Virus record (IMG/VR): IMGVR_UViG_3300037264_008423
Span: 174,437-238,436 of that record
Length of the DNA: 64,000 bases
Direction: 5' to 3' (one strand)
The notes under the pieces were generated by a model. It was not told the origin of the DNA. It saw only the letters and a program-made list of their open reading frames with translations, and made no database searches. This document shows positions 3,601-33,635 of the stretch, one piece after another; position 1 is the stretch's first letter; every line of letters begins with the position of its first letter. The position numbers and the translations under genes were made by a program.

Positions 3601-3983
3601 AGGCGACCAGCAAGGCGCTTCGCGCTGGCTGCAACCACCTGATTCAAAGCACGGCCAGCGACATGATGCTGCTGTGCCTGATCACTATCGAGGCGCTCAT
3701 GCGCGATGCCGGATTAAATTCCCTGCTGGTTTCCACGGTCCACGACAGCTTGGTTGTGGATGCGCTGCGCGAAGAGTTGCCGCAGATCCATGACATCGCG
3801 TATGGGGTGATGAACGACATCCCCACGGTCATTCAGTCCATGCTGCCTGGCTACGATACGTCCTGGATGATTGTGCCGCTGGCCGGGGATAGCGAAGTGG
3901 GCTTGAACTACCTGGAAACCAATAAAATATCCGGGTCCAACCCGGACTGGGAGGCTCTGCTGCAACCCTGGAAGAAGGGATAG
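636..3983 (+). CDS. polA: Family A DNA polymerase with N-terminal UDG-like domain and 3'-5' exonuclease
   Basis: Exo DTETTG; motif A DLSQIELR; motif B RKIAKTVNFLTGYG; motif C TVHDS; N-terminal CAAC...ITRC...LIPVGTD resembles family-4 UDG fold as in SPO1-type polymerases. Confidence 0.95.
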   Translation: MVLALMPENEQVDAETKKPRAPLRVFRTHAGEPVSYTGVKKFFKDIITYHNGSRMEGKRELVELADPNLPLGDRPLIPGRHSPVCAACGLDQMGAKRPYLEYAGPDRPVVTILVECVSKRDDDRGQIGVGNPIAYLSSLIYRLESVHKVSLGEIRWVPITRCAYREGKPPNYKTKGNWCRYHAIQDLILHPPKVVIPVGTDVLGLLSHKSNAQDWSGRLLTWRGWPDDWLTEPDYILDRTDPAHKEGTVRGHPIFGPAPQVRIPMVPLQSQRIVLAAQNEVVTRRWVDHLIYALKVGKMEIPPPDYIRPWYHLSLDPQEIIQILQTVIQYANAHPPFRVAYDTETTGLKAWAYYKRVSADEVTRSADPRIVFMMFRWVNPETQQPESLGFPWDYPESELKPFLQAITPYVVELLATASIVGHNLTFDELFTIATVGTEPAEHEPFTPDGALNPSWLWLQDRINLLASAMGWDTWHMAFTVQKRRGSLGLEVITYGYAPDLAGYEEDMTLLIDLHGDLMNPANNKGGHYANCPKPLWETHLKPYVMGDVEATYRARDALAVELSQTQGYRIPMAKPGVPGRFRYYTCPNREWVYQNIMVPASRTLTKIMARGMHIDAEELITQEQVYPERVEAAKRELRDVDPAISAWCQTKLSESQQVKEGQSSEDRVLWELDLENKSQLKELLFQVLKCPIQRMTKSGRKIYGDELAGWEHLECAIKLEYAAVDKYTLNRLAVDHPNLRPLQQYRKEFKLYSTYVRPLRNMMAERLDKKQRVKEPHLSVDHCIHAQFMLTGTRGGRLSCRDPNLQQLPNDGKVKRLFSSRFGSRGCIYAADLSQIELRLMAAACGDASMVGAYLNDVDLHSLTASKIAWSDGKISYEEFTKKHMEKLQHEGHADQAKDLELKRKIAKTVNFLTGYGGGAFGLQNVLANNQVYITLEECEHIIDSFFEAYPALQRFLGVYKDFILTNACAVSLFGRVRFFEEVRGEDQEATSKALRAGCNHLIQSTASDMMLLCLITIEALMRDAGLNSLLVSTVHDSLVVDALREELPQIHDIAYGVMNDIPTVIQSMLPGYDTSWMIVPLAGDSEVGLNYLETNKISGSNPDWEALLQPWKKG

Positions 3984-3993
3984 TAATTAGAGT

Positions 3994-6585: not shown

Positions 6586-8673
6586 ATGGAAAGAACCGAA
6601 TATATGACCATAACTGACGCCCAACGGATCGTGGCTCTTAGAACTGAACTCACTGACCACGCCTATCGCTATTACATCGCCAACTCGCCTTTTATTTCCG
6701 ATGACGAGTATGACCTGAAGTTTAAACAGCTCGTGGAAATGGAGAATCAGCACCCCGAAATGTTCGACCCCAATTCGCCCACTCAGCGCGTTGGTTCGCC
6801 AATTCCCGGAGAGCAGCGCAAAATGCATCACCGGGTGCGTATGCTGTCGCTGGATAACACGAACAGTCTTGACGAAGCGATGGATTTTCTGTCGGGTCAA
6901 GAGGGGAGAGAAGTGACTTTGGAGATGAAAATTGACGGCCTGAGCCTGCACCTGGACTACGAAAAAGGCAGGCTGGTCCGCGCCATCACGCGCGGCGATG
7001 GATCGGATGGCCAGGACGTGACGGAAAACGCGCGCACCATCCATACCCTCCCCCTGGTGCTGCGCCGACCCGTGGACATTTCAGTGCGCGGCGAGGTTTA
7101 TTGGAGTCTGACCCAGTTTGAAAAGTATAACACGACGGTCGCCGAGGGAGACCGGTTTGCCAATCCGCGCAATGGGGCTTCCGGCAGTCTTCAGCTCAAG
7201 GATTCCAGGGAAGTGGCGCGCCGCCACTTGAGTTTTGTGGCCTACAGCGTCCCCACGGATCTTCCCCCAGCCGTTACCACCCAGGAGGCCCTGCTGGAAT
7301 ATCTGGAAAGCCTGGGATTTATCAGCACCATGACGCTGCCGGTGCGCGCGGACATGGCCGGGCTGCCCTACTTGACCAGCGTGATTCAGCGGGAGGAGTT
7401 AGAGCGCGCGATTGGGTTTCTGAAAGAGTATCGGGCAAGCTTGGACCTGGAGACCGATGGCCTGGTGATTAAGCTTTCCTCCCTGGCGCTTCAGCGCGAT
7501 TTAGGCGAGGGCACGCGCGCGCCTAAATGGGCGGCGGCCTACAAATTTCCCCCGGAGAGCAAAGAGGCGCTGCTCCTGTCCATCGCTCCGCAACTAGGTC
7601 GAACGGGACAAATTACGCCCGTAGCTAAAATCGAACCTGTGACGCTGGATGGCGTGGTGGTTCAGAGCGTGTCCCTGTGCAATCAGGACGAACTGGACCG
7701 GCTGGGCATTGATATCGGCGACTATGTTCAGGTCCAGCGCAGCGGCAAAGTGATTCCCAAGATCGTGGGCCTGGCGCGGCCCTCTCCTTCCAAGTCCAGC
7801 CCCCATCAGAGTTTTCAACTTCCCAAAACCTGTCCGTGTTGCGCCACAACTTTGATCCGCCCCCAGGGCATGGTCCACCTATACTGCCCCAACCCGGACT
7901 GCCCGGATCAGGTTTACGCTCGCCTGGTTTACGCCCTGGGCAAAGAGGCGCTGGACATTGACGGTTGCGGGGACATTACCGTGCGCTTGCTGGTGGAAAA
8001 AGCAGGTGTGAAGAAACTGTCCGATCTGTTCGCTTTAACCGAGTTTGGATTCATTAAGGGCGCGGCCCAGCGCAAGCTGAAGGAGGGTATCGAGGCCGCC
8101 AAGAAAGCTCCGCTTTGGCGCAAGTTGGCGGCGCTCAGCATCGAAGAAGTGGGCAGGGTCAAGTGCCAGGACTTGGCCACTAAATTCAGCCAACCGGTGC
8201 CTGCGGATGAATTACAAAAAGAGGAGACGGCGGAAAAGCCGGAAGACCAGCTCAACCCCATCCTGCGCATGATGAACTACTCCGGGCAGGTCGAACGCCT
8301 GATCGGCGCATCAGCTAAAGACCAGCTTATCAACTATCTGTATGACCATATCGACGAGCTGGAGCGCCTGGCCGATCACGGTTTTATTTTCAGCGCGGAC
8401 GCCCGGTCTGCCGGTCCGCTCAGTGGCAAGACTTTTTGCATCACGGGCACGCTCATGAGCGGCAAGCGGGATGAAGTTAGCGCCTTGATCGAGAAGCTAG
8501 GCGGTGTGGTCAAGGGCGAGGTCACCAAGAACGTCGGGTTTTTAATTCAGGGGATGGGCGGGGGCAATAAAAAGGCGGCAGGCGCGCTCAAACACGGCAC
8601 CCGGACGATCACTGAGGAGGAACTTTATCAGATGATGGGTGTCCCTATGCCGATCATGGGAAAAATTGAGTAA
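6586..8673 (+). CDS. ligA: NAD-dependent DNA ligase
   Basis: KIDG adenylation motif, TRGDG, DGLVIK, CPCC..CPNPDC Zn finger, C-terminal BRCT (FCITGTL); start uncertain (6586 or 6604). Confidence 0.97.
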   Translation: MERTEYMTITDAQRIVALRTELTDHAYRYYIANSPFISDDEYDLKFKQLVEMENQHPEMFDPNSPTQRVGSPIPGEQRKMHHRVRMLSLDNTNSLDEAMDFLSGQEGREVTLEMKIDGLSLHLDYEKGRLVRAITRGDGSDGQDVTENARTIHTLPLVLRRPVDISVRGEVYWSLTQFEKYNTTVAEGDRFANPRNGASGSLQLKDSREVARRHLSFVAYSVPTDLPPAVTTQEALLEYLESLGFISTMTLPVRADMAGLPYLTSVIQREELERAIGFLKEYRASLDLETDGLVIKLSSLALQRDLGEGTRAPKWAAAYKFPPESKEALLLSIAPQLGRTGQITPVAKIEPVTLDGVVVQSVSLCNQDELDRLGIDIGDYVQVQRSGKVIPKIVGLARPSPSKSSPHQSFQLPKTCPCCATTLIRPQGMVHLYCPNPDCPDQVYARLVYALGKEALDIDGCGDITVRLLVEKAGVKKLSDLFALTEFGFIKGAAQRKLKEGIEAAKKAPLWRKLAALSIEEVGRVKCQDLATKFSQPVPADELQKEETAEKPEDQLNPILRMMNYSGQVERLIGASAKDQLINYLYDHIDELERLADHGFIFSADARSAGPLSGKTFCITGTLMSGKRDEVSALIEKLGGVVKGEVTKNVGFLIQGMGGGNKKAAGALKHGTRTITEEELYQMMGVPMPIMGKIE

Positions 8674-9260
8674 GCTGTAAAGGGTTGGCTGGCATGACTT
8701 TGCGTTGTCCGTAAAAATATTTTCATTTTTAATTTGCATTGTTTACGAAAATAATTTAGTTTCTGCTTGTCAATGAGACGTAATGTCTTTACGGTGAAAG
8801 TGCAAATCAGAATGAACTTAGAGCGTCACATGTCAGTCAATTTAAAACCCGCCAATTCGGGACGGCATTATGCTGCCCTGATTCAAGGGTGGGATAGTGC
8901 CGCCGTGTTGTGCTTTAGCGCCCGTAGCACACGCGAACCAGGTCAGGAGGTAGCAGGATAGGGTCGCACTCCAAAGAATTTTCATCCTGCTACCTCGAAA
9001 GAAGTCAGCAGGATTTTTCATTTTATGCCCCAGTGGGGACGAGAGCCAGGCCGTTAATCTGGTAAACGCCACAGTTAAAGACCCGTGGGTTCAACTCAGA
9101 CTTGAGATCGTAGGTGTGTGTTCTTTGTTGAAAGGCCCCACGGCCTGTAGCCGCAAGCCGGTGACCGCCGTGGGGCTTTTATTTTAAACCGTATTTAGAG
9201 AAAGAAAATTATGCCGACGCGCCAAGCCGAATCACAGAAGATCGCAGCCGCCGCGCGCAC

Positions 9261-9334
9261 GCGGGTATGGTCTAACAGCAGAACGAGGCGGTGCCAGCGC
9301 TTAGGTGGGGGTGCGATTCCCCCTACCCGCTCCA
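9261..9334 (+). tRNA. tRNA-Gly(GCC)
   Basis: Acceptor GCGGGTA/TACCCGC, loop GTGCCAG, CCA end. Confidence 0.8.
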
Positions 9335-9416
9335 AATTTAGAATGCTACCGGTCTCAACGGTGACGTGATTCAGACCACTGAGTCATCCGAGTTCTATCC
9401 TCGGCGGCTGCACCGT

Positions 9417-9896: not shown

Positions 9897-10340
9897 GTGA
9901 TCAATAGTAAACAAATCAAAGCTGAATTAGCCGTCATAAAGGTGCAGGAAGCGGCACTTAAAATGGGCCGGATATGCAGCAAACCTGTCATTGAAGGGAC
10001 GCGCTACGATTTGATAGTTGATGACGGTAAGCGTCTTATGCGCGTTCAAGTCAAATACTGTGGTGGTTATTACGATGGCGTTGTTGCGGTTAAACTTAAA
10101 AGTTATGGTAGGCAGGGGGCAGACCGTAGCTATTGCGCCAGTGAAATCGACGCCGTTATAGCCTATTCTGATGTGAATGACCGGCTTTATTGTCTGCCGA
10201 TTACTATGCTAGCGGACAAAACAACCATCCGCTTGCGCCATGCTCGTCCTAGAAACAATCAAAAGCAGCGGATTTGGCAGGCAGAAGACTTTATATGGGG
10301 CTGTAGCTCAAATAGGCAGAGCAGCACGATGGCATCGTGA
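9897..10340 (+). CDS. PD-(D/E)XK endonuclease (group I intron-like family), putative free-standing homing endonuclease
   Basis: KAELAV...RYDLIVDDG...RVQVKY; GTG start inferred; stop lies inside tRNA-Ala(GGC). Confidence 0.85.
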   Translation: MINSKQIKAELAVIKVQEAALKMGRICSKPVIEGTRYDLIVDDGKRLMRVQVKYCGGYYDGVVAVKLKSYGRQGADRSYCASEIDAVIAYSDVNDRLYCLPITMLADKTTIRLRHARPRNNQKQRIWQAEDFIWGCSSNRQSSTMAS

Positions 10341-10373
10341 AGGTTGAGGGTGCGATTCCCTTCGGTTCCACCA
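10297..10373 (+). tRNA. tRNA-Ala(GGC)
   Basis: Loop ATGGCAT, G3:U70, ACCA end. Confidence 0.85.
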
Positions 10374-11243: not shown

Positions 11244-11666
11244 ATGAACAGCAAGATTATCGGGGATATTTCCGAAGCATCCGTAATTGCGGCTCTTTTA
11301 AAATCGGGTTTGAACGTGTTAATGCCTTTCGGTGACAGGAACAGGTATGATATCGTGATTGAACATGACGGAAAATTTGAACGTGTGCAGATAAAAACAG
11401 GTAGGCAGCGCGGGAGAGTTATAGTCTATAATACACAGAGTTCAACTCGCGTTAACGGCAAACGGTGTGAATTAGGCTACCAAGGCCAAGTTGAAACTTT
11501 TGCGGTTTATCACCGTGAGCTGGATCGGGTCTATATGGTTCCTGTCGGTAAAGCAGCTACCGGTAAAGGGAGTTTGCGCTTGGGGCCTAAAGGCGGTTCT
11601 GGTGTAGGACCAAGATGCCTTTACGCTGATGACTATATTTTAAGGAGCGTTAGCTCAGTCCAGTAG
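11244..11666 (+). CDS. PD-(D/E)XK endonuclease, putative free-standing homing endonuclease
   Basis: GDISEASV...RYDIVIEHDG...RVQIKTG; stop lies in the D loop of tRNA-Asp. Confidence 0.88.
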   Translation: MNSKIIGDISEASVIAALLKSGLNVLMPFGDRNRYDIVIEHDGKFERVQIKTGRQRGRVIVYNTQSSTRVNGKRCELGYQGQVETFAVYHRELDRVYMVPVGKAATGKGSLRLGPKGGSGVGPRCLYADDYILRSVSSVQ

Positions 11667-11720
11667 AGCAATCGACTGTCTATCGAAAGGTCAGGGGAGC
11701 AAAGCCCCTACGCTCCGCCA
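11644..11720 (+). tRNA. tRNA-Asp(GTC)
   Basis: Acceptor GGAGCGT/ACGCTCC, loop CTGTCTA, GCCA end. Confidence 0.85.
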
Positions 11721-15388: not shown

Positions 15389-15599
15389 AAAAGATAGGGC
15401 CTCCCCGGCCTGGAACTAAATTTGTTTACCAAGGTATCGACTACCGTTTCCGGTCTTTCAGCGTTGAGTATCAGGTCTTAAAATTGGACCCGGACGAGCG
15501 CCTGATCCACCTAAGCCGCCGTAAGCGCATTACCTACGAGGCATGGCAGACCTTGATGACGCATTATAGGGCTGCGATTACTTTTGTTAGTTGAATTTT

Positions 15600-15673
15600 G
15601 ACGGGCCGATTGGCTGTGGGTTATCTTCACTTGAAATGAAGCGATACGTGTTCAACTCACGTCCGTGGCTCCA
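15600..15673 (+). pseudogene. Degenerate tRNA-like element (TGA loop, short variable region)
   Basis: CTTCA-CTTGAAA-TGAAG and ACGTG-TTCAACT-CACGT arms, CCA; acceptor poorly paired. Confidence 0.4.
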
Positions 15674-15732
15674 TGTGCCACGGCCTCGGAGGTAGCAAAA
15701 ATTCCACGCCGCCCCTTGTCCGTCAATTAAAT

Positions 15733-15859
15733 CGCAGGGAAGTAAAACGGCAAAAACCCGTGACCATCCCTTGTCCGGTAACGGGCCGACCGGAAACGGT
15801 TATCATACATCAACCTAAAGAGTTGAAATTAGGAGGTTCGACTCCTCCCCCTGCGACCA
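15733..15859 (+). ncRNA. tRNA-like RNA with large D-arm insertion bearing a Ro-type bulged helix
   Basis: CGCAGGG/CCCTGCG+ACCA, GGAGG-TTCGACT-CCTCC T arm, TCAAC-CTAAAGA-GTTGA arm; insert TTGTCCG-GTAA-CGGGC-C-GA. Confidence 0.65.
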
Positions 15860-15863
15860 TTTT

Positions 15864-15958: not shown

Positions 15959-16032
15959 GGCCCGTTAGCTCAAAAATAGAGCACCCGGCTGATAACCGGG
16001 AGACGCCGGAGTGTTACCGGCATGGGCTACCA
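15959..16032 (+). tRNA. tRNA-Ile(GAT)
   Basis: CCCGG-CTGATAA-CCGGG arm, ACCA end. Confidence 0.88.
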
Positions 16033-16347
16033 TTTCATTCGGGGCCGATGAAAAGTGGGAAGTATGGACGTGGCAAAGATACCAGACCTGGGCGACCGGG
16101 CTGTTTTTCACGGCGCGCACGAGCATCTGATAGTGCTTCAGCACCCGATTTGGCTCACTTTCCGGCTGTATGCTGGTTGACTGCATACAGCCTAATATAT
16201 CAAATAAGAATTACCAATGCTATAGGGTCTTTACCCCATATTTTGGCTTAATTTGTGTTGATATTGACTTGGAACTATAAGTAAACATTTAAGCCTGGAT
16301 AGCTCAGAAGTAGAGCGCAGTCAGATTAACTGTTGTTTTAGTTCTAT

Positions 16348-16422
16348 AGCGCATTAGACTAACAGCAAGGTCGCCGGTCTTTCTAACCGGAAGCGCGGGG
16401 GCAGCACCCGCATGCGCTGCCA
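16348..16422 (+). tRNA. tRNA-Glu(TTC)
   Basis: AGCGCAT/ATGCGCT, CCGGT-CTTTCTA-ACCGG. Confidence 0.85.
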
Positions 16423-16425
16423 TTT

Positions 16426-16573: not shown

Positions 16574-16774
16574 TCACTTAAGCTGAGGCATATGCTTGGT
16601 GTGCCCGGAAAAAGAGGCGTAGCAACTGGCTGCGGCGAGATTGGCGACCATGCTGGGAAAGAGGCTCCAGTTGAAAGCCTGACCCCGCATGCGGGGGTCC
16701 TGCAAATCCTGATACATGTGCTCGGCCCAGTGGATGCCCACTTCCTTAGCTTTGTCACGGTTGGTTCTTGCCAT
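16574..16774 (-). CDS. Small hypothetical protein
   Basis: MARTNRDKAKEVGIHWAEH...; fills the gap between tRNAs. Confidence 0.5.
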   Translation of the reverse strand: MARTNRDKAKEVGIHWAEHMYQDLQDPRMRGQAFNWSLFPSMVANLAAASCYASFSGHTKHMPQLK

Positions 16775-16793
16775 AAACTGTAGAACATTTTTC

Positions 16794-16869
16794 GCTCCCA
16801 AGGTGTAAGAATCTGCACGCTTCCCTGCGAAGGAAGAGGCTCGTGGTGTGAATCCACGTGGGAGCGCCA
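16794..16869 (+). tRNA. tRNA-Arg(GCG)
   Basis: GCTCCCA/TGGGAGC, CTTCC-CTGCGAA-GGAAG. Confidence 0.85.
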
Positions 16870-16875
16870 TTTTAC

Positions 16876-17004
16876 GGGGACGTAGCTTAATCTGGTAGAG
16901 CGCCAGGGTGAAAACCTGGAGGTGCGGGTTCAAATCCCGTTGTAATTACCCTCCTACAATCCTTGCCTGAAAGGGCCGAACTATGAGGATTATCGTCCCC
17001 GCCA
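16876..17004 (+). tRNA. tRNA-Phe(GAA) interrupted by a 53-nt structured insert between T arm and 3' acceptor strand
   Basis: 5' GGGGACG pairs with CGTCCCC-GCCA at 16994-17004; insert 16941-16993. Confidence 0.75.
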
Positions 17005-17015
17005 TTTAAAAAGCG

Positions 17016-17040
17016 CAGCCCCGAATCCGGTTCGGGGCTG
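17016..17040. terminator. GC-rich hairpin between convergent units
   Basis: CAGCCCCGAA-TCCGG-TTCGGGGCTG. Confidence 0.55.
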
Positions 17041-17108
17041 GCCTGGCTAACTATGATGACTGAATCGAACGACTATCGGCAACCGCGCAACTCACACGGT
17101 CCGCACCA

Positions 17109-28774: not shown

Positions 28775-29204
28775 GGGGGCGTATTAGACTCGATCTAGTG
28801 CCCTGAACGCTTAGCGACAGCCGAGGATGGTGGTTGGACCTCGATAATACCTCCACCGAAAACATCAAATGCCGAAAGCACTGATGATACGGCTCTCTTA
28901 GCCCAAGCCGAAGCGATCTTCGCCGACCCGGATGAAGTCCTCGCCAAGACCGGCTATGCAGAGCCAGCTTTGGCCTAGCGCCAAACCGTCCACCCTCTGA
29001 CGCCTGCTACGGGGTGTGGGCGTAACCAGCAGGCAAAAACGCGGTCTCTTCCCGTGAACCGCGCCGTAGATCACGTGAGTGTGGCCGGGGTGATGTCTTG
29101 CCGTTCTCTTACCCGGTCATTCTAAATAAAGAAGCGGAGATGCCTGTGGATGCTCGCGCAAGGACTATTAGAGACAGGAGGGGCAGTGCCTCCTCGCCTC
29201 CACC
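28775..29204 (+). ncRNA. ssrA: tmRNA
   Basis: 5' GGGGGCGTATTAGACTCGA; 3' T arm plus CGCCTCC-ACCA with G3:U70; tag frame 28871-28978 after the CAAAT resume context. Confidence 0.92.
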
Positions 29205-29239
29205 AATTTCCGCCTCCACTGTTTACAGTTCTGTAATCC

Positions 29240-29854: not shown

Positions 29855-30098
29855 TAAATTTTGCGCCGGTCTGGCCAAGATCGTTCGTAGCGTTTGTGTA
29901 ACGGAACTTGTCTTTCATTCTCCAGACTGGCGCGATCTTTTTAATTTGACGGGTCGTTTGATGTCGGTTATCAGCACCAAAATCATAAGTTGGAAATTGT
30001 GGCGTAACAACCACCAGGGGCACCATCAGCTCACGCGCGTCGTGGTCTGAATTGCCCCTGAAGCTAAAATCAAAACGATGTCGCTTTTTATCCGTCAA
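29820..30098 (-). CDS. Hypothetical protein
   Basis: 92-aa ORF filling the gap. Confidence 0.45.
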   Translation of the reverse strand: MTDKKRHRFDFSFRGNSDHDARELMVPLVVVTPQFPTYDFGADNRHQTTRQIKKIAPVWRMKDKFRYTNATNDLGQTGAKFIKEQLPAWKLE

Positions 30099-30106
30099 AA
30101 CTTTTT

Positions 30107-30268
30107 AGCGCGCGAACCGCGCGGGTCGAATGTGATTGGTTACCATCAAACCGTTGGTTATTGGTGCAAATCCAATCCGGTCCGCAAGGGCCGGTAGCTC
30201 AATCAGCAGAGCAGCGGTTCCCGTAAGGGATTTCCGATCCTGAGCCTTACCCGTGCGGTTCGCGCGCT
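30107..30268 (+). ncRNA. yrlA: YrlA-type Y RNA (circularly permuted tRNA-like domain plus Ro60-binding stem)
   Basis: 19-bp terminal stem; GTCGAATG with bulged C opposite TTACC; T arm, GCAA-closed acceptor, D arm; about 0.8 kb from Ro60. Confidence 0.88.
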
Positions 30269-30313
30269 CATTTTGGTTCTACAGTGGAGATTAAAAGTAA
30301 ACAAAGCAAAACT

Positions 30314-31058: not shown

Positions 31059-32708
31059 ATGAGTGTTTACCAGACGGTTAGCCGTAAGGCAACCCCGCAA
31101 AATCAACCCATTCCCGGTTCCAAGCAGGTGAAGAACTCCGCAGGTGGTTACACCTGGCTCCTGGATGACTGGAGCCGCCTGCGCCGATTCCTGGTGCTTG
31201 GCTCCCAGGGTGGAACGTATTACGTCAAGGAACAGGATCTCGTCAAGGCCAACGCGGAAGTGGTTGACCGGTGCTTGGGTCTTGACGCGGCCAGGACGAT
31301 TCAGCAAATCGTGGAAGTTTCGGATAAGGGCCTGGCCTATCGCAACGAGGCGGCGCTCTTCGCGCTGGCCAAGGCCGCCGCCGACCAGAATGAAAAGTCA
31401 CGAGCGTTGGCTCTTGACGCGCTGCCGCAAGTGGCGCGCACCGGCACCCACCTGTTTCACTGGGCAAACTATGTTCAGTCGATGCGGGGCTGGGGCCGCG
31501 CCCTGAGAAAGGCGGTCGGGCACTGGTATAACCAGTGGACGGCGGACGAGCTGGCCTACCAGGTCGTCAAGTATCAGCAGCGCGATGGCTGGTCCCACCG
31601 GGACCTGCTCCGCCTGGCGCACCCGGTCGCCGAGACCGAGGGGCACGACGCGGTATTCCGCTGGGTCCTGGGCGGCCAGGAGGCCCTGGCGGCGCGCACG
31701 GTGAAGCGCCAGCGTCCCGGTCAAGAGGTAAAGCCTGAATACACCTACCCGGATCTGGCTTTCCACCTGCCGCAGTTCATCGAGATCTTTGAAAAGGCCA
31801 AGACGGCGGACGCCAAGACGCTTGTCAAGCTGATCACCGAGCGCAGCCTGCCCCGCGAGGCGATCCCCACGGAGCAGTTGAACTGCCCGGAGGTTTGGGA
31901 GGCGCTCTTAGTCAACATGCCAGCCACGGCCCTGGTCCGCAACCTGGGCAAGATGACCAGCATCGGGCTGGTCAAGACGCTTTCCAAGGCGTCCAAGACC
32001 ATTGTGGACAAGCTGGGTAACGCCGCGTGGCTCAAGAAGTCCCGCGTCCACCCGATGCAGTTTTTGATCGCGGCCAAGGTGTATGCCCAGGGTCACGGGG
32101 AAAAGGGCAAGCTCGCCTGGACGCCGGATCAGTCGGTGGTCTCGGCCCTGGAGCGCGCCTTCTACGCCTCTTTTGGCAACGTCAAGCCCATCGGCAACAA
32201 CGTGCTGATCTCGCTGGATATCTCCAGTTCGATGGGACATACGATGGAAGGCACCTGCTTGTCCTGCTACGAGGCGGAAGCGGCCCTGGCGCTAATCCAT
32301 GTCAGCATTGAGGACACCGTGGGGGTCATGGGTTTCGCCACAAACTACCGGGAAATCAAGATCCGCAAGGGCATGAGCCTGGTGGACGCGATGCAGCACG
32401 TCGCCGGTCAGGGCTTCGGCGGCACGGACTGCTCGCTGCCGTTTCGCTGGGCGGGAACGGAGCGGATGGATGTGAACTCATTTATCACGGTCACGGACAA
32501 TGAATCATGGCACGGCGGTGTTCACCCGTCCCAGGCGCTCAACGCCTATCGCCAGGCTTCCGGCAATCAGGCCCGGTCGGTCGTCATGGGCATGACGAGC
32601 ACGGGCTTTACTATCGCGGACCCCAATGACGCGGGTTCGCTCGACGTGGTGGGCTTTGACGCCTCCGCGCCTGCGCTCATCTCGGATTTCTGCCGGGGTG
32701 ATGTCTAA
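31059..32708 (+). CDS. rsr: Ro60/TROVE ribonucleoprotein (Rsr)
   Basis: NSAGGY..LRRFLVLGSQGGTYY; ARTGTHLF; KYQQRDGWSHRDLLRLAHP; vWA DISSSM, GGTDCSLP, TDNESW, VVGFD. Confidence 0.97.
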   Translation: MSVYQTVSRKATPQNQPIPGSKQVKNSAGGYTWLLDDWSRLRRFLVLGSQGGTYYVKEQDLVKANAEVVDRCLGLDAARTIQQIVEVSDKGLAYRNEAALFALAKAAADQNEKSRALALDALPQVARTGTHLFHWANYVQSMRGWGRALRKAVGHWYNQWTADELAYQVVKYQQRDGWSHRDLLRLAHPVAETEGHDAVFRWVLGGQEALAARTVKRQRPGQEVKPEYTYPDLAFHLPQFIEIFEKAKTADAKTLVKLITERSLPREAIPTEQLNCPEVWEALLVNMPATALVRNLGKMTSIGLVKTLSKASKTIVDKLGNAAWLKKSRVHPMQFLIAAKVYAQGHGEKGKLAWTPDQSVVSALERAFYASFGNVKPIGNNVLISLDISSSMGHTMEGTCLSCYEAEAALALIHVSIEDTVGVMGFATNYREIKIRKGMSLVDAMQHVAGQGFGGTDCSLPFRWAGTERMDVNSFITVTDNESWHGGVHPSQALNAYRQASGNQARSVVMGMTSTGFTIADPNDAGSLDVVGFDASAPALISDFCRGDV

Positions 32709-33543: not shown

Positions 33544-33635
33544 GGCCCCTTGGTGTAACAGTAACACGACCGTCTTATACACGGGAAGTCCTAGATGTGG
33601 GCACGATGCTGGTGCAAATCCGGCAGGGGCTACCA
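33544..33635 (+). tRNA. tRNA-Ile(TAT) with long variable region
   Basis: GGCCCCT/AGGGGCT-ACCA, loop CTTATAC, about 22-nt variable region. Confidence 0.75.

What the first reader, a model, noticed from the sequence alone, without database searches (positions are those of the whole stretch)
16876..17004. tRNA-Phe with a 53-nt insert carrying a Ro-binding-type hairpin between T arm and acceptor
The 5' part is a normal tRNA-Phe(GAA) through the T arm. The matching 3' acceptor strand CGTCCCC-GCCA appears only after an insert (16941-16993). The insert folds as TTGTA/TACAA plus AATCCT/AGGATT, enclosing TT-GCCT-GAAA-GGGC-[C]-GA, a GNRA-capped helix with bulged C and the GCCGAA motif. This is an unusual insertion point for a bacterial tRNA. 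It could be a Ro-tethered aminoacylatable RNA or a removable intron-like segment.
Basis: partly seen in the sequence, partly recalled or inferred. Interest (0 to 1): 0.88.

Follow-up and report, generated by a model that had tools for sequence, protein, structure and literature searches.

The report
Phage tRNA carrying a Ro60-binding hairpin
A giant phage encodes a complete tRNA (anticodon GAA, CCA end) with a conserved hairpin spliced in that looks just like the docking site for the Ro60 protein the same phage encodes, so it is probably a new form of "Y RNA" built on a real tRNA.

Summary
Window 16876-17004 is a tRNA-Phe(GAA) body, a 53-nt insert between the T stem and the 3' acceptor strand, then CGTCCCC-G-CCA.

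It is not an accident. Nine distinct homologues in related uncultured jumbo phages carry an insert of 53-59 nt at the same junction. Compensatory changes support the acceptor stem that pairs across the insert, and both insert helices.

The insert core is UU-helix-loop-helix-[bulged C]-GAA. It contains the published bacterial Rsr/Ro60 motif GNCGAA. It also shares the flanking CAAUCC and GGUUAYC blocks with the terminal stem of the phage's own YrlA-like Y RNA (30108-30269), but in permuted connectivity.

The window encodes a full-length Ro60/Rsr (31059-32708). X and rsr share one contig and strand in three phages, and are joined by a 100%-identical contig overlap in a fourth.

The anticodon arm drifts within the family (GAA, CAU, ACG; loops longer than 7 nt; absent in one mini version). 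The acceptor, CCA, T arm and Ro hairpin stay constant.

Best reading: a Y RNA whose effector module is a genuine CCA-ended tRNA, not an intron. Rsr binding and charging are untested. It is a new variant of a known kind.

The parts
16876..16940 (+). tRNA body of X: acceptor 5' strand (16876-16882), D arm, anticodon arm (anticodon GAA), variable loop, T arm ending in an invariant G49-U65 pair
   Evidence: Rfam tRNA 52.5 bits; helices 97-100% paired in 9 homologues
16941..16993 (+). 53-nt insert between tRNA positions 65 and 66, read here as an Rsr/Ro60-binding module
   Evidence: conserved at the same junction in 9 distinct sequences
16942..16956 (+). 5' strand of basal helix P1 of the insert (contains CCUCCU, which pairs with UAUGAGG)
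   Evidence: 8 of 11 P1 pairs changed on both sides, 89% paired
16957..16962 (+). conserved 5' side of the internal loop, CAAUCC, also present on the 3' strand of the YrlA stems
16963..16980 (+). Ro-type site: U16963-U16964, helix GCCU/GGGC capped by GAAA, bulged C16977, G16978-A16979 pairing with the two U, then A16980. GNCGAA lies at 16975-16980
   Evidence: U-G 9/9, U-A 8/9, helix covaries; motif as in PMC4201824
16982..16993 (+). 3' strand of P1, ending in GGAUUAU(C), the GGUUAYC block shared with YrlA-type RNAs
16994..17004 (+). acceptor 3' strand CGTCCCC, discriminator G, encoded CCA
   Evidence: 4 of 7 acceptor pairs compensatory
16794..16866 (+). tRNA-Arg(GCG) immediately upstream, syntenic with X in all relatives; promoter-like site at 16752-16779
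17016..17040 (.). G+C-rich hairpin after X. It scores as a terminator for the convergent methyltransferase gene and may be bidirectional
   Evidence: similar hairpins follow X in L026 and L014
31059..32708 (+). rsr: Ro60 orthologue (TROVE plus Ro60 vWA), the presumed protein partner
30108..30269 (+). YrlA-like Y RNA: terminal helix with GGGU[C]GAAUG..GGUUACC on the 5' strand and GCC-UU-ACCC on the 3' strand; permuted tRNA-like core
   Evidence: Rfam YrlA 33.5 bits, below the gathering score
29946..30095 (+). second Y-like RNA (YrlB-like): GACGGGU[C]G..GGUUAUC pairing with AUCCGUC
   Evidence: conserved in L141, L143, L146
15598..15727 (+). Y-like RNA with terminal Ro stem GACGGGC[C]GA / CUUGUCCGUC and an internal T arm
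   Evidence: conserved in L015, L026, L148, with C-G to U-A covariation next to the bulge
15733..15860 (+). X2: a second CCA-ended RNA with acceptor stem CGCAGGG/CCCUGCG, a closed Ro hairpin, GGUUAUC and a T arm
   Evidence: homologue in L015 with a compensatory acceptor change

Best explanation
X (16876-17004) is an Rsr/Ro60 partner RNA, in other words a Y RNA, built on a complete, unpermuted tRNA.

Shown:
- A canonical tRNA body with a 7-bp acceptor stem and an encoded CCA.
- A conserved, covarying insert of 53-59 nt at the T-stem/acceptor junction.
- An insert core identical in architecture and sequence blocks to the Rsr-binding stem of the phage's own YrlA.
- A Ro60 gene on the same strand of the same contig.

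Inferred:
- The RNA is made from the tRNA operon together with tRNA-Arg(GCG). RNase P trims its 5' end and it is trimmed at the 3' end to the encoded CCA. The insert stays in the mature RNA as a side arm.
- The phage Rsr ring docks on the bulged-C/GNCGAA helix.
- The tRNA part serves as the effector or tether module, as the tRNA-like domain is thought to do in YrlA. It would link Rsr, and through it a host 3'-5' exonuclease such as PNPase, to something that recognises tRNA shape and a free CCA end.
- The side arm leaves the acceptor/T helix on the strand that EF-Tu contacts (nucleotides 63-67; this is established tRNA knowledge, not tested here), and the anticodon arm drifts in the family. So ordinary decoding is probably not the conserved function, although charging of the GAA versions by PheRS remains possible.
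For: - Structure and conservation.
- Ro site: the closed helix, bulged C, and G-U/A-U pairs are present in 9 of 9 or 8 of 9 members. GNCGAA is the motif that Chen et al. 2014 assign to Rsr recognition (PMC4201824), and Thermus phage Yrl RNAs were found through the same CGAA motif (PMC12135203).
- Same-genome comparator: YrlA stems in W, L141, L143, L145 and L146 read GCGGGU[C]GAAUG-N5-GGUUAYC on one strand and (G/C/U)CC-UU-ACCCGC on the other, preceded by CAA in the relatives. X reads CAAUCC-UU-GCCU-loop-GGGC[C]GAAC-N5-GGAUUAUC.
- Rsr.
- Linkage on one contig and strand: window (14.05 kb), L145 (9.1 kb), L148 (11.7 kb); L026/L143 by a 655-bp 100% overlap.
- Anticodon drift: an 8-nt loop in L015, CAU in a loop longer than 7 nt in L139, ACG in L145.
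- L146 has a mini version at the syntenic site that keeps only a short acceptor, CCA, one hairpin and the Ro hairpin.
- A second CCA-ended family with the same hairpin, X2, is also present.
- Precedent: M. smegmatis YrlA is cut by RNase P and receives CCA in vivo.
Against: - There are no binding, expression or processing data.
- X lies 9-14 kb from rsr, whereas known YrlA genes lie within about 4 kb.
- The Rfam YrlA and Y_RNA models do not hit X, even at E up to 10. The permuted topology would explain this.
- The bare closed-hairpin motif is not rare: 6 in the window against 2.3 +/- 1.6 in shuffles. The argument therefore rests on conservation, the flanking blocks and rsr, not on the motif alone.
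- The trailing N0-1G of the published motif is absent in W. L138 has GCCGCA and L145 has GCCGAC.
- There are only 9 sequences in about three subclades, and the alignment was fitted to the model.
- In W the ordinary phage tRNA-Phe is reduced to a 5' remnant. X may therefore still have to decode UUY there.
Confidence: 0.75

Rival explanations
1. The insert is an intron-like segment that is removed, by a phage or host nuclease plus a ligase, to give an ordinary 76-nt tRNA-Phe. The conserved hairpin would be the recognition element for that machinery, possibly with Rsr as a chaperone.
For: - The flanking tRNA halves would make a perfect tRNA.
- In W the ordinary tRNA-Phe gene is degenerate, so a functional Phe tRNA might be needed.
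- In bacteria, Rsr loci are often linked to the RtcB ligase (PMC7790460, listed).
Against: - No group I, ribozyme or other intron family matches at E up to 10.
- A bulge-helix-bulge motif cannot form, because the 3' exon pairs with the 5' end of the RNA rather than with the intron (read from the sequence).
- None of the 37 window ORFs scanned against Pfam is an RNA ligase or splicing endonuclease.
- L015 and L026 keep a normal tRNA-Phe beside X.
- The anticodon arm decays or changes identity while the insert is conserved. That is the opposite of what is expected if the spliced tRNA were the product.
Confidence: 0.08
2. The insert is a conserved structured arm with a partner other than Rsr, for example a phage tRNA-modifying or tRNA-repair enzyme or a processing signal. 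Its resemblance to the Y RNA stem would reflect shared ancestry, not shared binding.
For: - The GGUUAYC and CAAUCC blocks lie outside the minimal published Rsr motif. They recur in many small RNAs of the island, so a second factor could read them.
- X always lies near a class I methyltransferase gene in close relatives.
Against: - Every RNA carrying these blocks also carries the bulged-C/GNCG core.
- The blocks are found in the bona fide YrlA next to rsr.
- L012 has the methyltransferase without X, and L145 has X without an adjacent methyltransferase.
Confidence: 0.12
3. X is a tRNA gene disrupted by an insertion scar or small mobile element, with no function.
For: ARAGORN fails to call it. 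The insert has no repeat elsewhere in the window, so it is not an active repeat family.
Against: - Nine distinct sequences keep the insert at one junction, with compensatory changes in the acceptor, P1 and P2.
- Their neighbouring methyltransferases are only 49-66% identical to the window's at the protein level.
- The encoded CCA and the TTT context are kept.
Confidence: 0.02

Closest known systems
YrlA (Rfam RF02553), the tRNA-like bacterial and phage Y RNA bound by Rsr/Ro60 (Chen et al. 2014, PMC4201824)
   Same: - GNCGAA Rsr motif next to a bulged helix.
- T and D arms of tRNA type.
- Encoded on the same strand as rsr.
- Same flanking blocks (GGUUAYC, CAAUCC-UU) as the YrlA of this very phage.
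   Different: - In YrlA the Ro helix is made by the 5' and 3' termini and joins the tRNA-like core through the anticodon-stem position. The acceptor is closed by a loop and there is no anticodon and no CCA.
- In X the Ro helix is closed by a loop and enters between tRNA positions 65 and 66. The termini form a normal acceptor stem with encoded CCA, and a full anticodon arm is present.
- X lies 9-14 kb from rsr, not within 4 kb.
- X is not detected by RF02553.
[quoted passage not shown]
   Same: A Y RNA that ends up with an open 7-bp acceptor stem and a CCA end while bound to Rsr. The authors raised possible aminoacylation.
   Different: There the open acceptor arises by cutting a loop, which gives a two-piece RNA without an anticodon arm. 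X is a one-piece RNA with a genomically encoded CCA and an anticodon.
D. radiodurans Yrn1 and Yrn1-type Y RNAs (Ro helix continuing from the acceptor position)
   Same: Both strands of the bulged Ro helix are recognisable, and the order of D and T arms is that of a tRNA. The window's 15598-15727 RNA and the L106 array are of this type.
   Different: In Yrn1 the termini are buried in the Ro helix, so there is no free acceptor or CCA end. X has both.
tmRNA (also present in this window, 28775-29205)
   Same: A chargeable tRNA-like acceptor/T-arm module interrupted by a large functional insert. It is encoded in the same phage island.
   Different: The tmRNA insert lies between the D-analogue and the T arm and encodes a tag. 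tmRNA has no anticodon arm and its partner is SmpB, not Ro60.
tRNA introns (bacterial group I introns in the anticodon loop; archaeal bulge-helix-bulge introns at non-canonical positions)
   Same: An intervening sequence inside a tRNA gene.
   Different: X has no group I core and no BHB geometry. Its position at 65/66 lies in the acceptor/T stack. Conservation falls on the insert rather than on the anticodon.

Membership tests
tRNA (RF00005, canonical cloverleaf) | 7-bp acceptor stem formed by the 5' and 3' ends, plus discriminator and CCA | tested here: met
   GGGGACG/CGTCCCC-G-CCA; 98% paired, 4 of 7 pairs compensatory in 9 sequences
tRNA (RF00005, canonical cloverleaf) | D arm with A14, G18-G19; 5-bp anticodon stem with 7-nt loop and U33; T arm with UUCRANY loop | tested here: met
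   (52.5 bits). Met in W. L015 and L139 have anticodon loops longer than 7 nt
tRNA (RF00005, canonical cloverleaf) | T stem continues directly into the acceptor 3' strand (positions 65-66 adjacent) | tested here: not met
   53-nt insert at 16941-16993; ARAGORN does not call the gene
tRNA (RF00005, canonical cloverleaf) | aminoacylation and use in decoding | not testable with these tools
   Needs a PheRS charging assay, an EF-Tu binding assay and a translation assay
Bacterial Y RNA / YrlA (RF02553) | GNCGAA(N0-1G) motif assigned to Rsr recognition | tested here: met
   GCCGAA at 16975-16980. Present in 7 of 9 members; GCCGCA in L138 and GCCGAC in L145. The trailing N0-1G is met in L014, L148, L015 and L139 but not in W
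Bacterial Y RNA / YrlA (RF02553) | a Ro60/Rsr gene in the same genome, same strand, usually within 4 kb | tested here: inconclusive
   rsr is present on the same strand, but 14 kb away in W and 9-12 kb away in relatives
Bacterial Y RNA / YrlA (RF02553) | Ro-binding helix formed by the RNA's own 5' and 3' termini; tRNA-like core with a closed acceptor | tested here: not met
   In X the helix is a closed hairpin inside the RNA and the acceptor is open with CCA. No RF02553 or RF00019 match at E up to 10
Bacterial Y RNA / YrlA (RF02553) | physical binding to Rsr | not testable with these tools
   Needs EMSA or co-immunoprecipitation
tRNA intron (group I or bulge-helix-bulge) | group I catalytic core, or a BHB motif at the exon-intron junctions | tested here: not met
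   No Rfam intron or ribozyme family at E up to 10. The 3' exon pairs with the RNA's 5' end, so no BHB can be drawn (from the sequence)

The most novel reading that the evidence does not exclude
X, and the sister family X2, are charged on their CCA end while carrying Rsr. This would be an aminoacyl-tRNA/Ro60 particle. It could bring an RNA-surveillance ring, and through it a host exonuclease, to tRNA-reading machinery such as the ribosome A site, a synthetase or a tRNA-repair enzyme. Alternatively, the 3' end could thread the Ro cavity as a built-in gate. Either way, these phages would have turned real tRNAs into Y RNAs. That would give the first direct functional link between Ro60 and the translation apparatus.
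Probability: 0.25. Interest if true: 0.92.

Novelty: new variant of a known kind. Interest (0 to 1): 0.8.

Why it matters
Why bacterial and phage Y RNAs imitate tRNA has been an open question since 2014, and the factor that reads their tRNA-like domain is still unknown. Here the imitation is replaced by the real thing: an unpermuted tRNA with an anticodon and an encoded CCA, with the Ro60 docking stem grafted on as a side arm.

This gives a simple, testable object. Does Rsr bind it? Is it processed by RNase P? Is it charged by PheRS? Is it excluded by EF-Tu?

The natural variants (changed anticodons, a mini version without the anticodon arm, and the sister X2 family) already indicate which parts matter. 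It also shows that tRNA gene finders miss a class of phage tRNA-derived RNAs, and that tRNA islands of jumbo phages can hold at least five Ro-module RNAs.

Tried and rejected
- Ribozyme or intron. An Rfam E-value scan of 16700-17100 found nothing but the two tRNAs.
- Repeat or mobile element. blastn-short of the insert against the window found only itself.
- Anti-Shine-Dalgarno reading of CCUCCU. The block is absent in the L015 subclade and pairs within P1 instead.
- MFE folds of the single sequence. These are weak (z -2.4 and -1.05) and differ from the fold supported by covariation.
- Relatives in other collections:
  - GenBank phages, blastn: none.
  - IMG/VR, by five DNA patterns: only the window's own contig. 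A sixth pattern, whose gap range was too long for W-type loops, returned only chance hits.
  - The virion-protein route gave distant contigs without tRNAs.
- Cultured relative. Major capsid protein is at most 30% identical. The closest cultured Rsr is in Sinorhizobium phage Phosso, at 47%. Its 41 kb around rsr has a GACGAAG..GGGUUAUC site upstream of rsr but no X. The rest of that genome was not scanned.
- Genome-contig scan.
- RNA ligase or nuclease near X or rsr: none among 37 ORFs scanned.

Full report
**1. Where we are**

The window is part of IMGVR_UViG_3300037264_008423, a 238-kb uncultured jumbo phage contig. It encodes a gp23-type capsid protein, a prohead protease, a family A DNA polymerase, an NAD-dependent ligase and a RecA-like protein. 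No cultured phage is close; the capsid protein is at most 30% identical. From about 9.2 to 37.7 kb the + strand carries a tRNA island of roughly 28 tRNAs and a tmRNA at 28775-29205.

**2. The observation**

- 5' acceptor strand GGGGACG, a canonical D arm, an anticodon arm with GAA, and a T arm GCGGG/UUCAAAU/CCCGU ending at 16940.
- 53 extra nucleotides (16941-16993).
- CGTCCCC, the perfect complement of the 5' strand, then G, CCA and TTT.

The CCA-TTT ending is the one seen after the other tRNAs of the array. Rfam scores the body at 52.5 bits but has to break the acceptor. ARAGORN skips the gene. The insert has no other copy in the window and matches no Rfam ribozyme, intron or Y RNA model at E up to 10.

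**3. Homologues**

DNA patterns found nothing but the window's own contig in IMG/VR, and blastn found nothing in GenBank phages. Relatives of the neighbouring methyltransferase led to syntenic tRNA islands. One metagenome pattern scan and relatives of the Rsr protein added more.

The nine distinct members are:
- the window
- L026:1712-1843
- L014:8650-8780
- L148:4586-4716
- L124:157-284
- L015:6610-6740 (identical in L016 and L114)
- L138:2159-2286
- L139:1215-1341 (5' end cut by the contig)
- L145:799-933

All nine carry an insert of 53-59 nt at the same junction. A covariance model built on seven of them scores members at 93-137 bits and ordinary tRNAs below 49 bits. More distant relatives (L012/L013) have the island without X.

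**4. Structure**

On the nine-sequence alignment, 95.8% of pair cells are standard pairs and 18 of 38 pairs have changes on both sides. None of 500 shuffles reaches these values, and sliding the partners drops pairing to 35-50%.

- The acceptor stem that bridges the insert has 4 of 7 compensatory pairs, so the two halves really pair.
- The insert is one long imperfect hairpin:
  - a basal helix P1 (in W, 16942-16956 with 16982-16993; 8 of 11 pairs compensatory);
  - an asymmetric internal loop (5' side CAAUCC, 3' side A-C);
  - an apical helix P2 of 4-6 bp with a 4-5-nt loop, which also covaries (C-G to U-A).
- Between loop and P2 lie two invariant U. They pair with G and A that follow a bulged C (U-G in 9 of 9, U-A in 8 of 9).

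**5. What the insert is**

Four lines converge on an Rsr/Ro60 docking module.

(a) The 3' side of the core reads GGGC[C]GAA. It contains GNCGAA, the motif that Chen et al. 2014 found near the 5' end of every YrlA. They related it to the GGUCCGA contacted by Xenopus Ro60 (PMC4201824). The Yrl RNAs of a Thermus phage were found through the same CGAA motif (PMC12135203).

(b) The window encodes a full-length Ro60 orthologue at 31059-32708. It matches TROVE at 2.5e-47 and the Ro60 vWA domain at 2.2e-53. It also matches solved Ro60 and Rsr structures at E 1e-113 to 1e-104.

(c) About 800 nt upstream of rsr lies a YrlA-like RNA (30108-30269). Its Rfam YrlA score is 33.5 bits, below the gathering score. 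The same arrangement, tmRNA-YrlA-rsr, is found in L141, L143, L145 and L146.
- Its terminal stem reads GCGGGU[C]GAAUG-N5-GGUUAYC on the 5' strand and (G/C/U)CC-UU-ACCCGC on the 3' strand; the relatives have CAA before it, W has GAG.
- X reads CAAUCC-UU-GCCU-loop-GGGC[C]GAAC-N5-GGAUUAUC.
- So both strands of the YrlA stem, including blocks outside the minimal motif, are present in the insert. The connectivity is permuted: the end that is open in YrlA is closed by a loop in X, and the end that leads to the tRNA-like core in YrlA opens into the tRNA at positions 65/66.

(d) Linkage. X and rsr lie on the same strand of one contig in the window (14.05 kb apart), in L145 (9.1 kb) and in L148 (11.7 kb). 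In a fourth phage they are joined by a 655-bp 100%-identical overlap of L026 and L143.

An independent control comes from L106, an unrelated hit of the metagenome pattern. It carries an Rsr 48% identical to the window's, and upstream of it at least four modules read GGGCCG..GGUUAUC (three with GAAAG, one with CUGAG); those whose 3' strand was traced pair with CUUGCCC or CUUGUCC.

One caution: the bare closed-hairpin motif is not rare by chance (6 in the window against 2.3 expected). The case rests on the conservation, the flanking blocks and rsr together.

**6. Is it a decoding tRNA?**

The acceptor, CCA, D arm, T arm (nearly invariant; the G49-U65 pair is in all nine) and the insert are all kept. 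The anticodon arm is not:
- Seven members have GAA, but L015 has an 8-nt loop.
- L139 has CAU in a loop longer than 7 nt.
- L145 has ACG.
- In L146, which has rsr and YrlA, the syntenic site holds an 87-nt mini version. It has a 4-bp acceptor, CCA, one hairpin and the Ro hairpin, but no D or anticodon arm.
- L015 and L026 keep an ordinary tRNA-Phe beside X.

These facts argue that decoding is not the conserved function, and that the spliced tRNA is not the intended product.

Against this, in W the ordinary phage tRNA-Phe survives only as a 5' remnant at about 16297-16335. X is therefore the only GAA tRNA of the island.

From established tRNA structure, the side arm leaves the acceptor/T helix on the strand contacted by EF-Tu (nucleotides 63-67). 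I have not tested this.

**7. Mechanism proposed**

X is transcribed with tRNA-Arg(GCG); a promoter-like site lies at 16752-16779 and a hairpin follows X. It is processed like a tRNA, keeps its side arm, and binds the phage Rsr through that arm. The tRNA part, with its free CCA, is the effector module.

- The Rsr docking reading has my confidence of about 0.75.
- What the complex then does (tether Rsr and a host exonuclease to tRNA-reading machinery, gate the Ro cavity with its own 3' end, or protect a tRNA) is inference only.
- I give charging about 0.4, and routine decoding about 0.15.

**8. Rivals**

- Removable intron: 0.08.
- Arm read by another factor: 0.12.
- Dead gene: 0.02.

The evidence for and against each is set out in the Rival explanations section.

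**9. Comparison with known systems, and novelty**

Known bacterial Y RNAs come in two topologies:
- YrlA type: the Ro helix is made from the termini and joins through the anticodon position, and the acceptor is closed.
- Yrn1 type: the Ro helix continues from the acceptor position.

M. smegmatis YrlA acquires an open acceptor and CCA only after RNase P cuts it in two.

X is a third topology. It is a one-piece, unpermuted tRNA with an anticodon and an encoded CCA, and the Ro helix is a closed side arm at 65/66. I found no description of this in two full-text searches and the Ro/Y RNA papers I read. No Rfam family captures it. I therefore rate it a new variant of a known kind.

X fails the YrlA membership test on topology and on the Rfam score. 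It meets the test on the motif and on having an rsr partner in the genome.

**10. Context found on the way**

The island holds at least four further RNAs with the same Ro module:
- 15598-15727, terminal-stem type with a T arm, conserved in three relatives with C-G to U-A covariation next to the bulge;
- 15733-15860, 'X2', a second CCA-ended family with an acceptor stem, closed Ro hairpin and T arm, conserved in L015 with a compensatory acceptor change;
- 29946-30095, YrlB-like;
- 30108-30269, YrlA.

So CCA-ended RNAs carrying a Ro site are a recurring theme of this phage clade, not a single oddity.

Noticed in passing
window 15733-15860 (+); L015 about 9222-9345 (-): 'X2': a second family of CCA-ended RNAs. 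It has acceptor stem CGCAGGG/CCCUGCG-A-CCA-UUUU, a closed Ro-type hairpin (CUU-GUCC-GGUAAC-GGGC[C]GAC), GGUUAUC, a further hairpin and a T arm. There is no D or anticodon arm. The L015 copy has a compensatory change in the acceptor.
   Followed up: partly
window 15598-15727 (+); L015 ~8600-8739 (-), L026 ~3845-3985 (-), L148 3404-3540 (+): Y-like RNA with terminal Ro stem GACGGGC[C]GA / CUUGUCCGUC, GGGUUAUC and an internal T arm. It is conserved in three relatives; the pair next to the bulged C switches from C-G to U-A in L015.
   Followed up: partly
window 29946-30095 and 30108-30269 (+): Two Y RNA-like genes between the tmRNA and rsr. One is YrlB-like (GACGGGU[C]GUU..GGUUAUC with AUCCGUC). 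The other is YrlA-like (Rfam 33.5 bits, below the gathering score). The order tmRNA-YrlB-YrlA-rsr recurs in L141, L143 and L146; L145 has tmRNA-YrlA-rsr.
   Followed up: partly
L146 1405-1491 (+) (NCBI GCA_037025325.1, JBAIHS010000018.1): At the site syntenic with X (between tRNA-Arg(GCG) and tRNA-Val(UAC)) there is an 87-nt mini version. It has GCGA..UCGC-A-CCA, one hairpin and the Ro hairpin CUUGCUCG-UUUA-CGAGC[C]GAAG..GAUUAUC, but no D or anticodon arm.
   Followed up: partly
window about 16297-16335 (+): 5' remnant of the ordinary phage tRNA-Phe. Its acceptor 5' strand and D arm match the normal tRNA-Phe of L015, L026 and L012, but the sequence diverges from the anticodon stem on, and there is no T arm or 3' acceptor strand. 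X is therefore the only GAA tRNA in this island.
   Followed up: partly
window 16348-16425 (+): tRNA-Glu(UUC)-like gene with acceptor AGCGCAU/AUGCGCU, CCA, an aberrant D region and a GGCAGCA T loop. ARAGORN and Rfam both miss it; it was seen only as a weak hit of model R1 (23.7 bits).
   Followed up: no
window 33544-33635 (+): 92-nt tRNA-Ile(UAU) with a ~20-nt extra arm in the variable region, about 830 nt downstream of rsr. The arm does not carry the GNCGAA site.
   Followed up: no
L106 2600-3460 (+), upstream of an Rsr 48% identical to the window's (L106 3449-5149): An array of at least four modules starting GGGCCG..GGUUAUC (three with GAAAG, one with CUGAG) plus a GGGUCGCAG..GGUUAUU variant, wrapped around tRNA-like bodies. 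It looks like a cluster of Yrn1-type Y RNAs in an unrelated contig.
   Followed up: partly
window 10297-10370, 11644-11717, 15959-16029, 16794-16866 (+): Four ordinary-looking tRNAs (Ala GGC, Asp GUC, Ile GAU, Arg GCG) that Rfam finds and ARAGORN misses. The phage tRNA count from one tool alone is too low.
   Followed up: partly
L140 18352-18377 (Sinorhizobium phage Phosso, PV764938.1): GACGAAG..GGGUUAUC site in an unannotated gap about 1.6 kb upstream of the annotated Ro-like gene of a cultured 469-kb phage. It is probably an unannotated Y RNA, and Phosso is a possible laboratory system.
   Followed up: no
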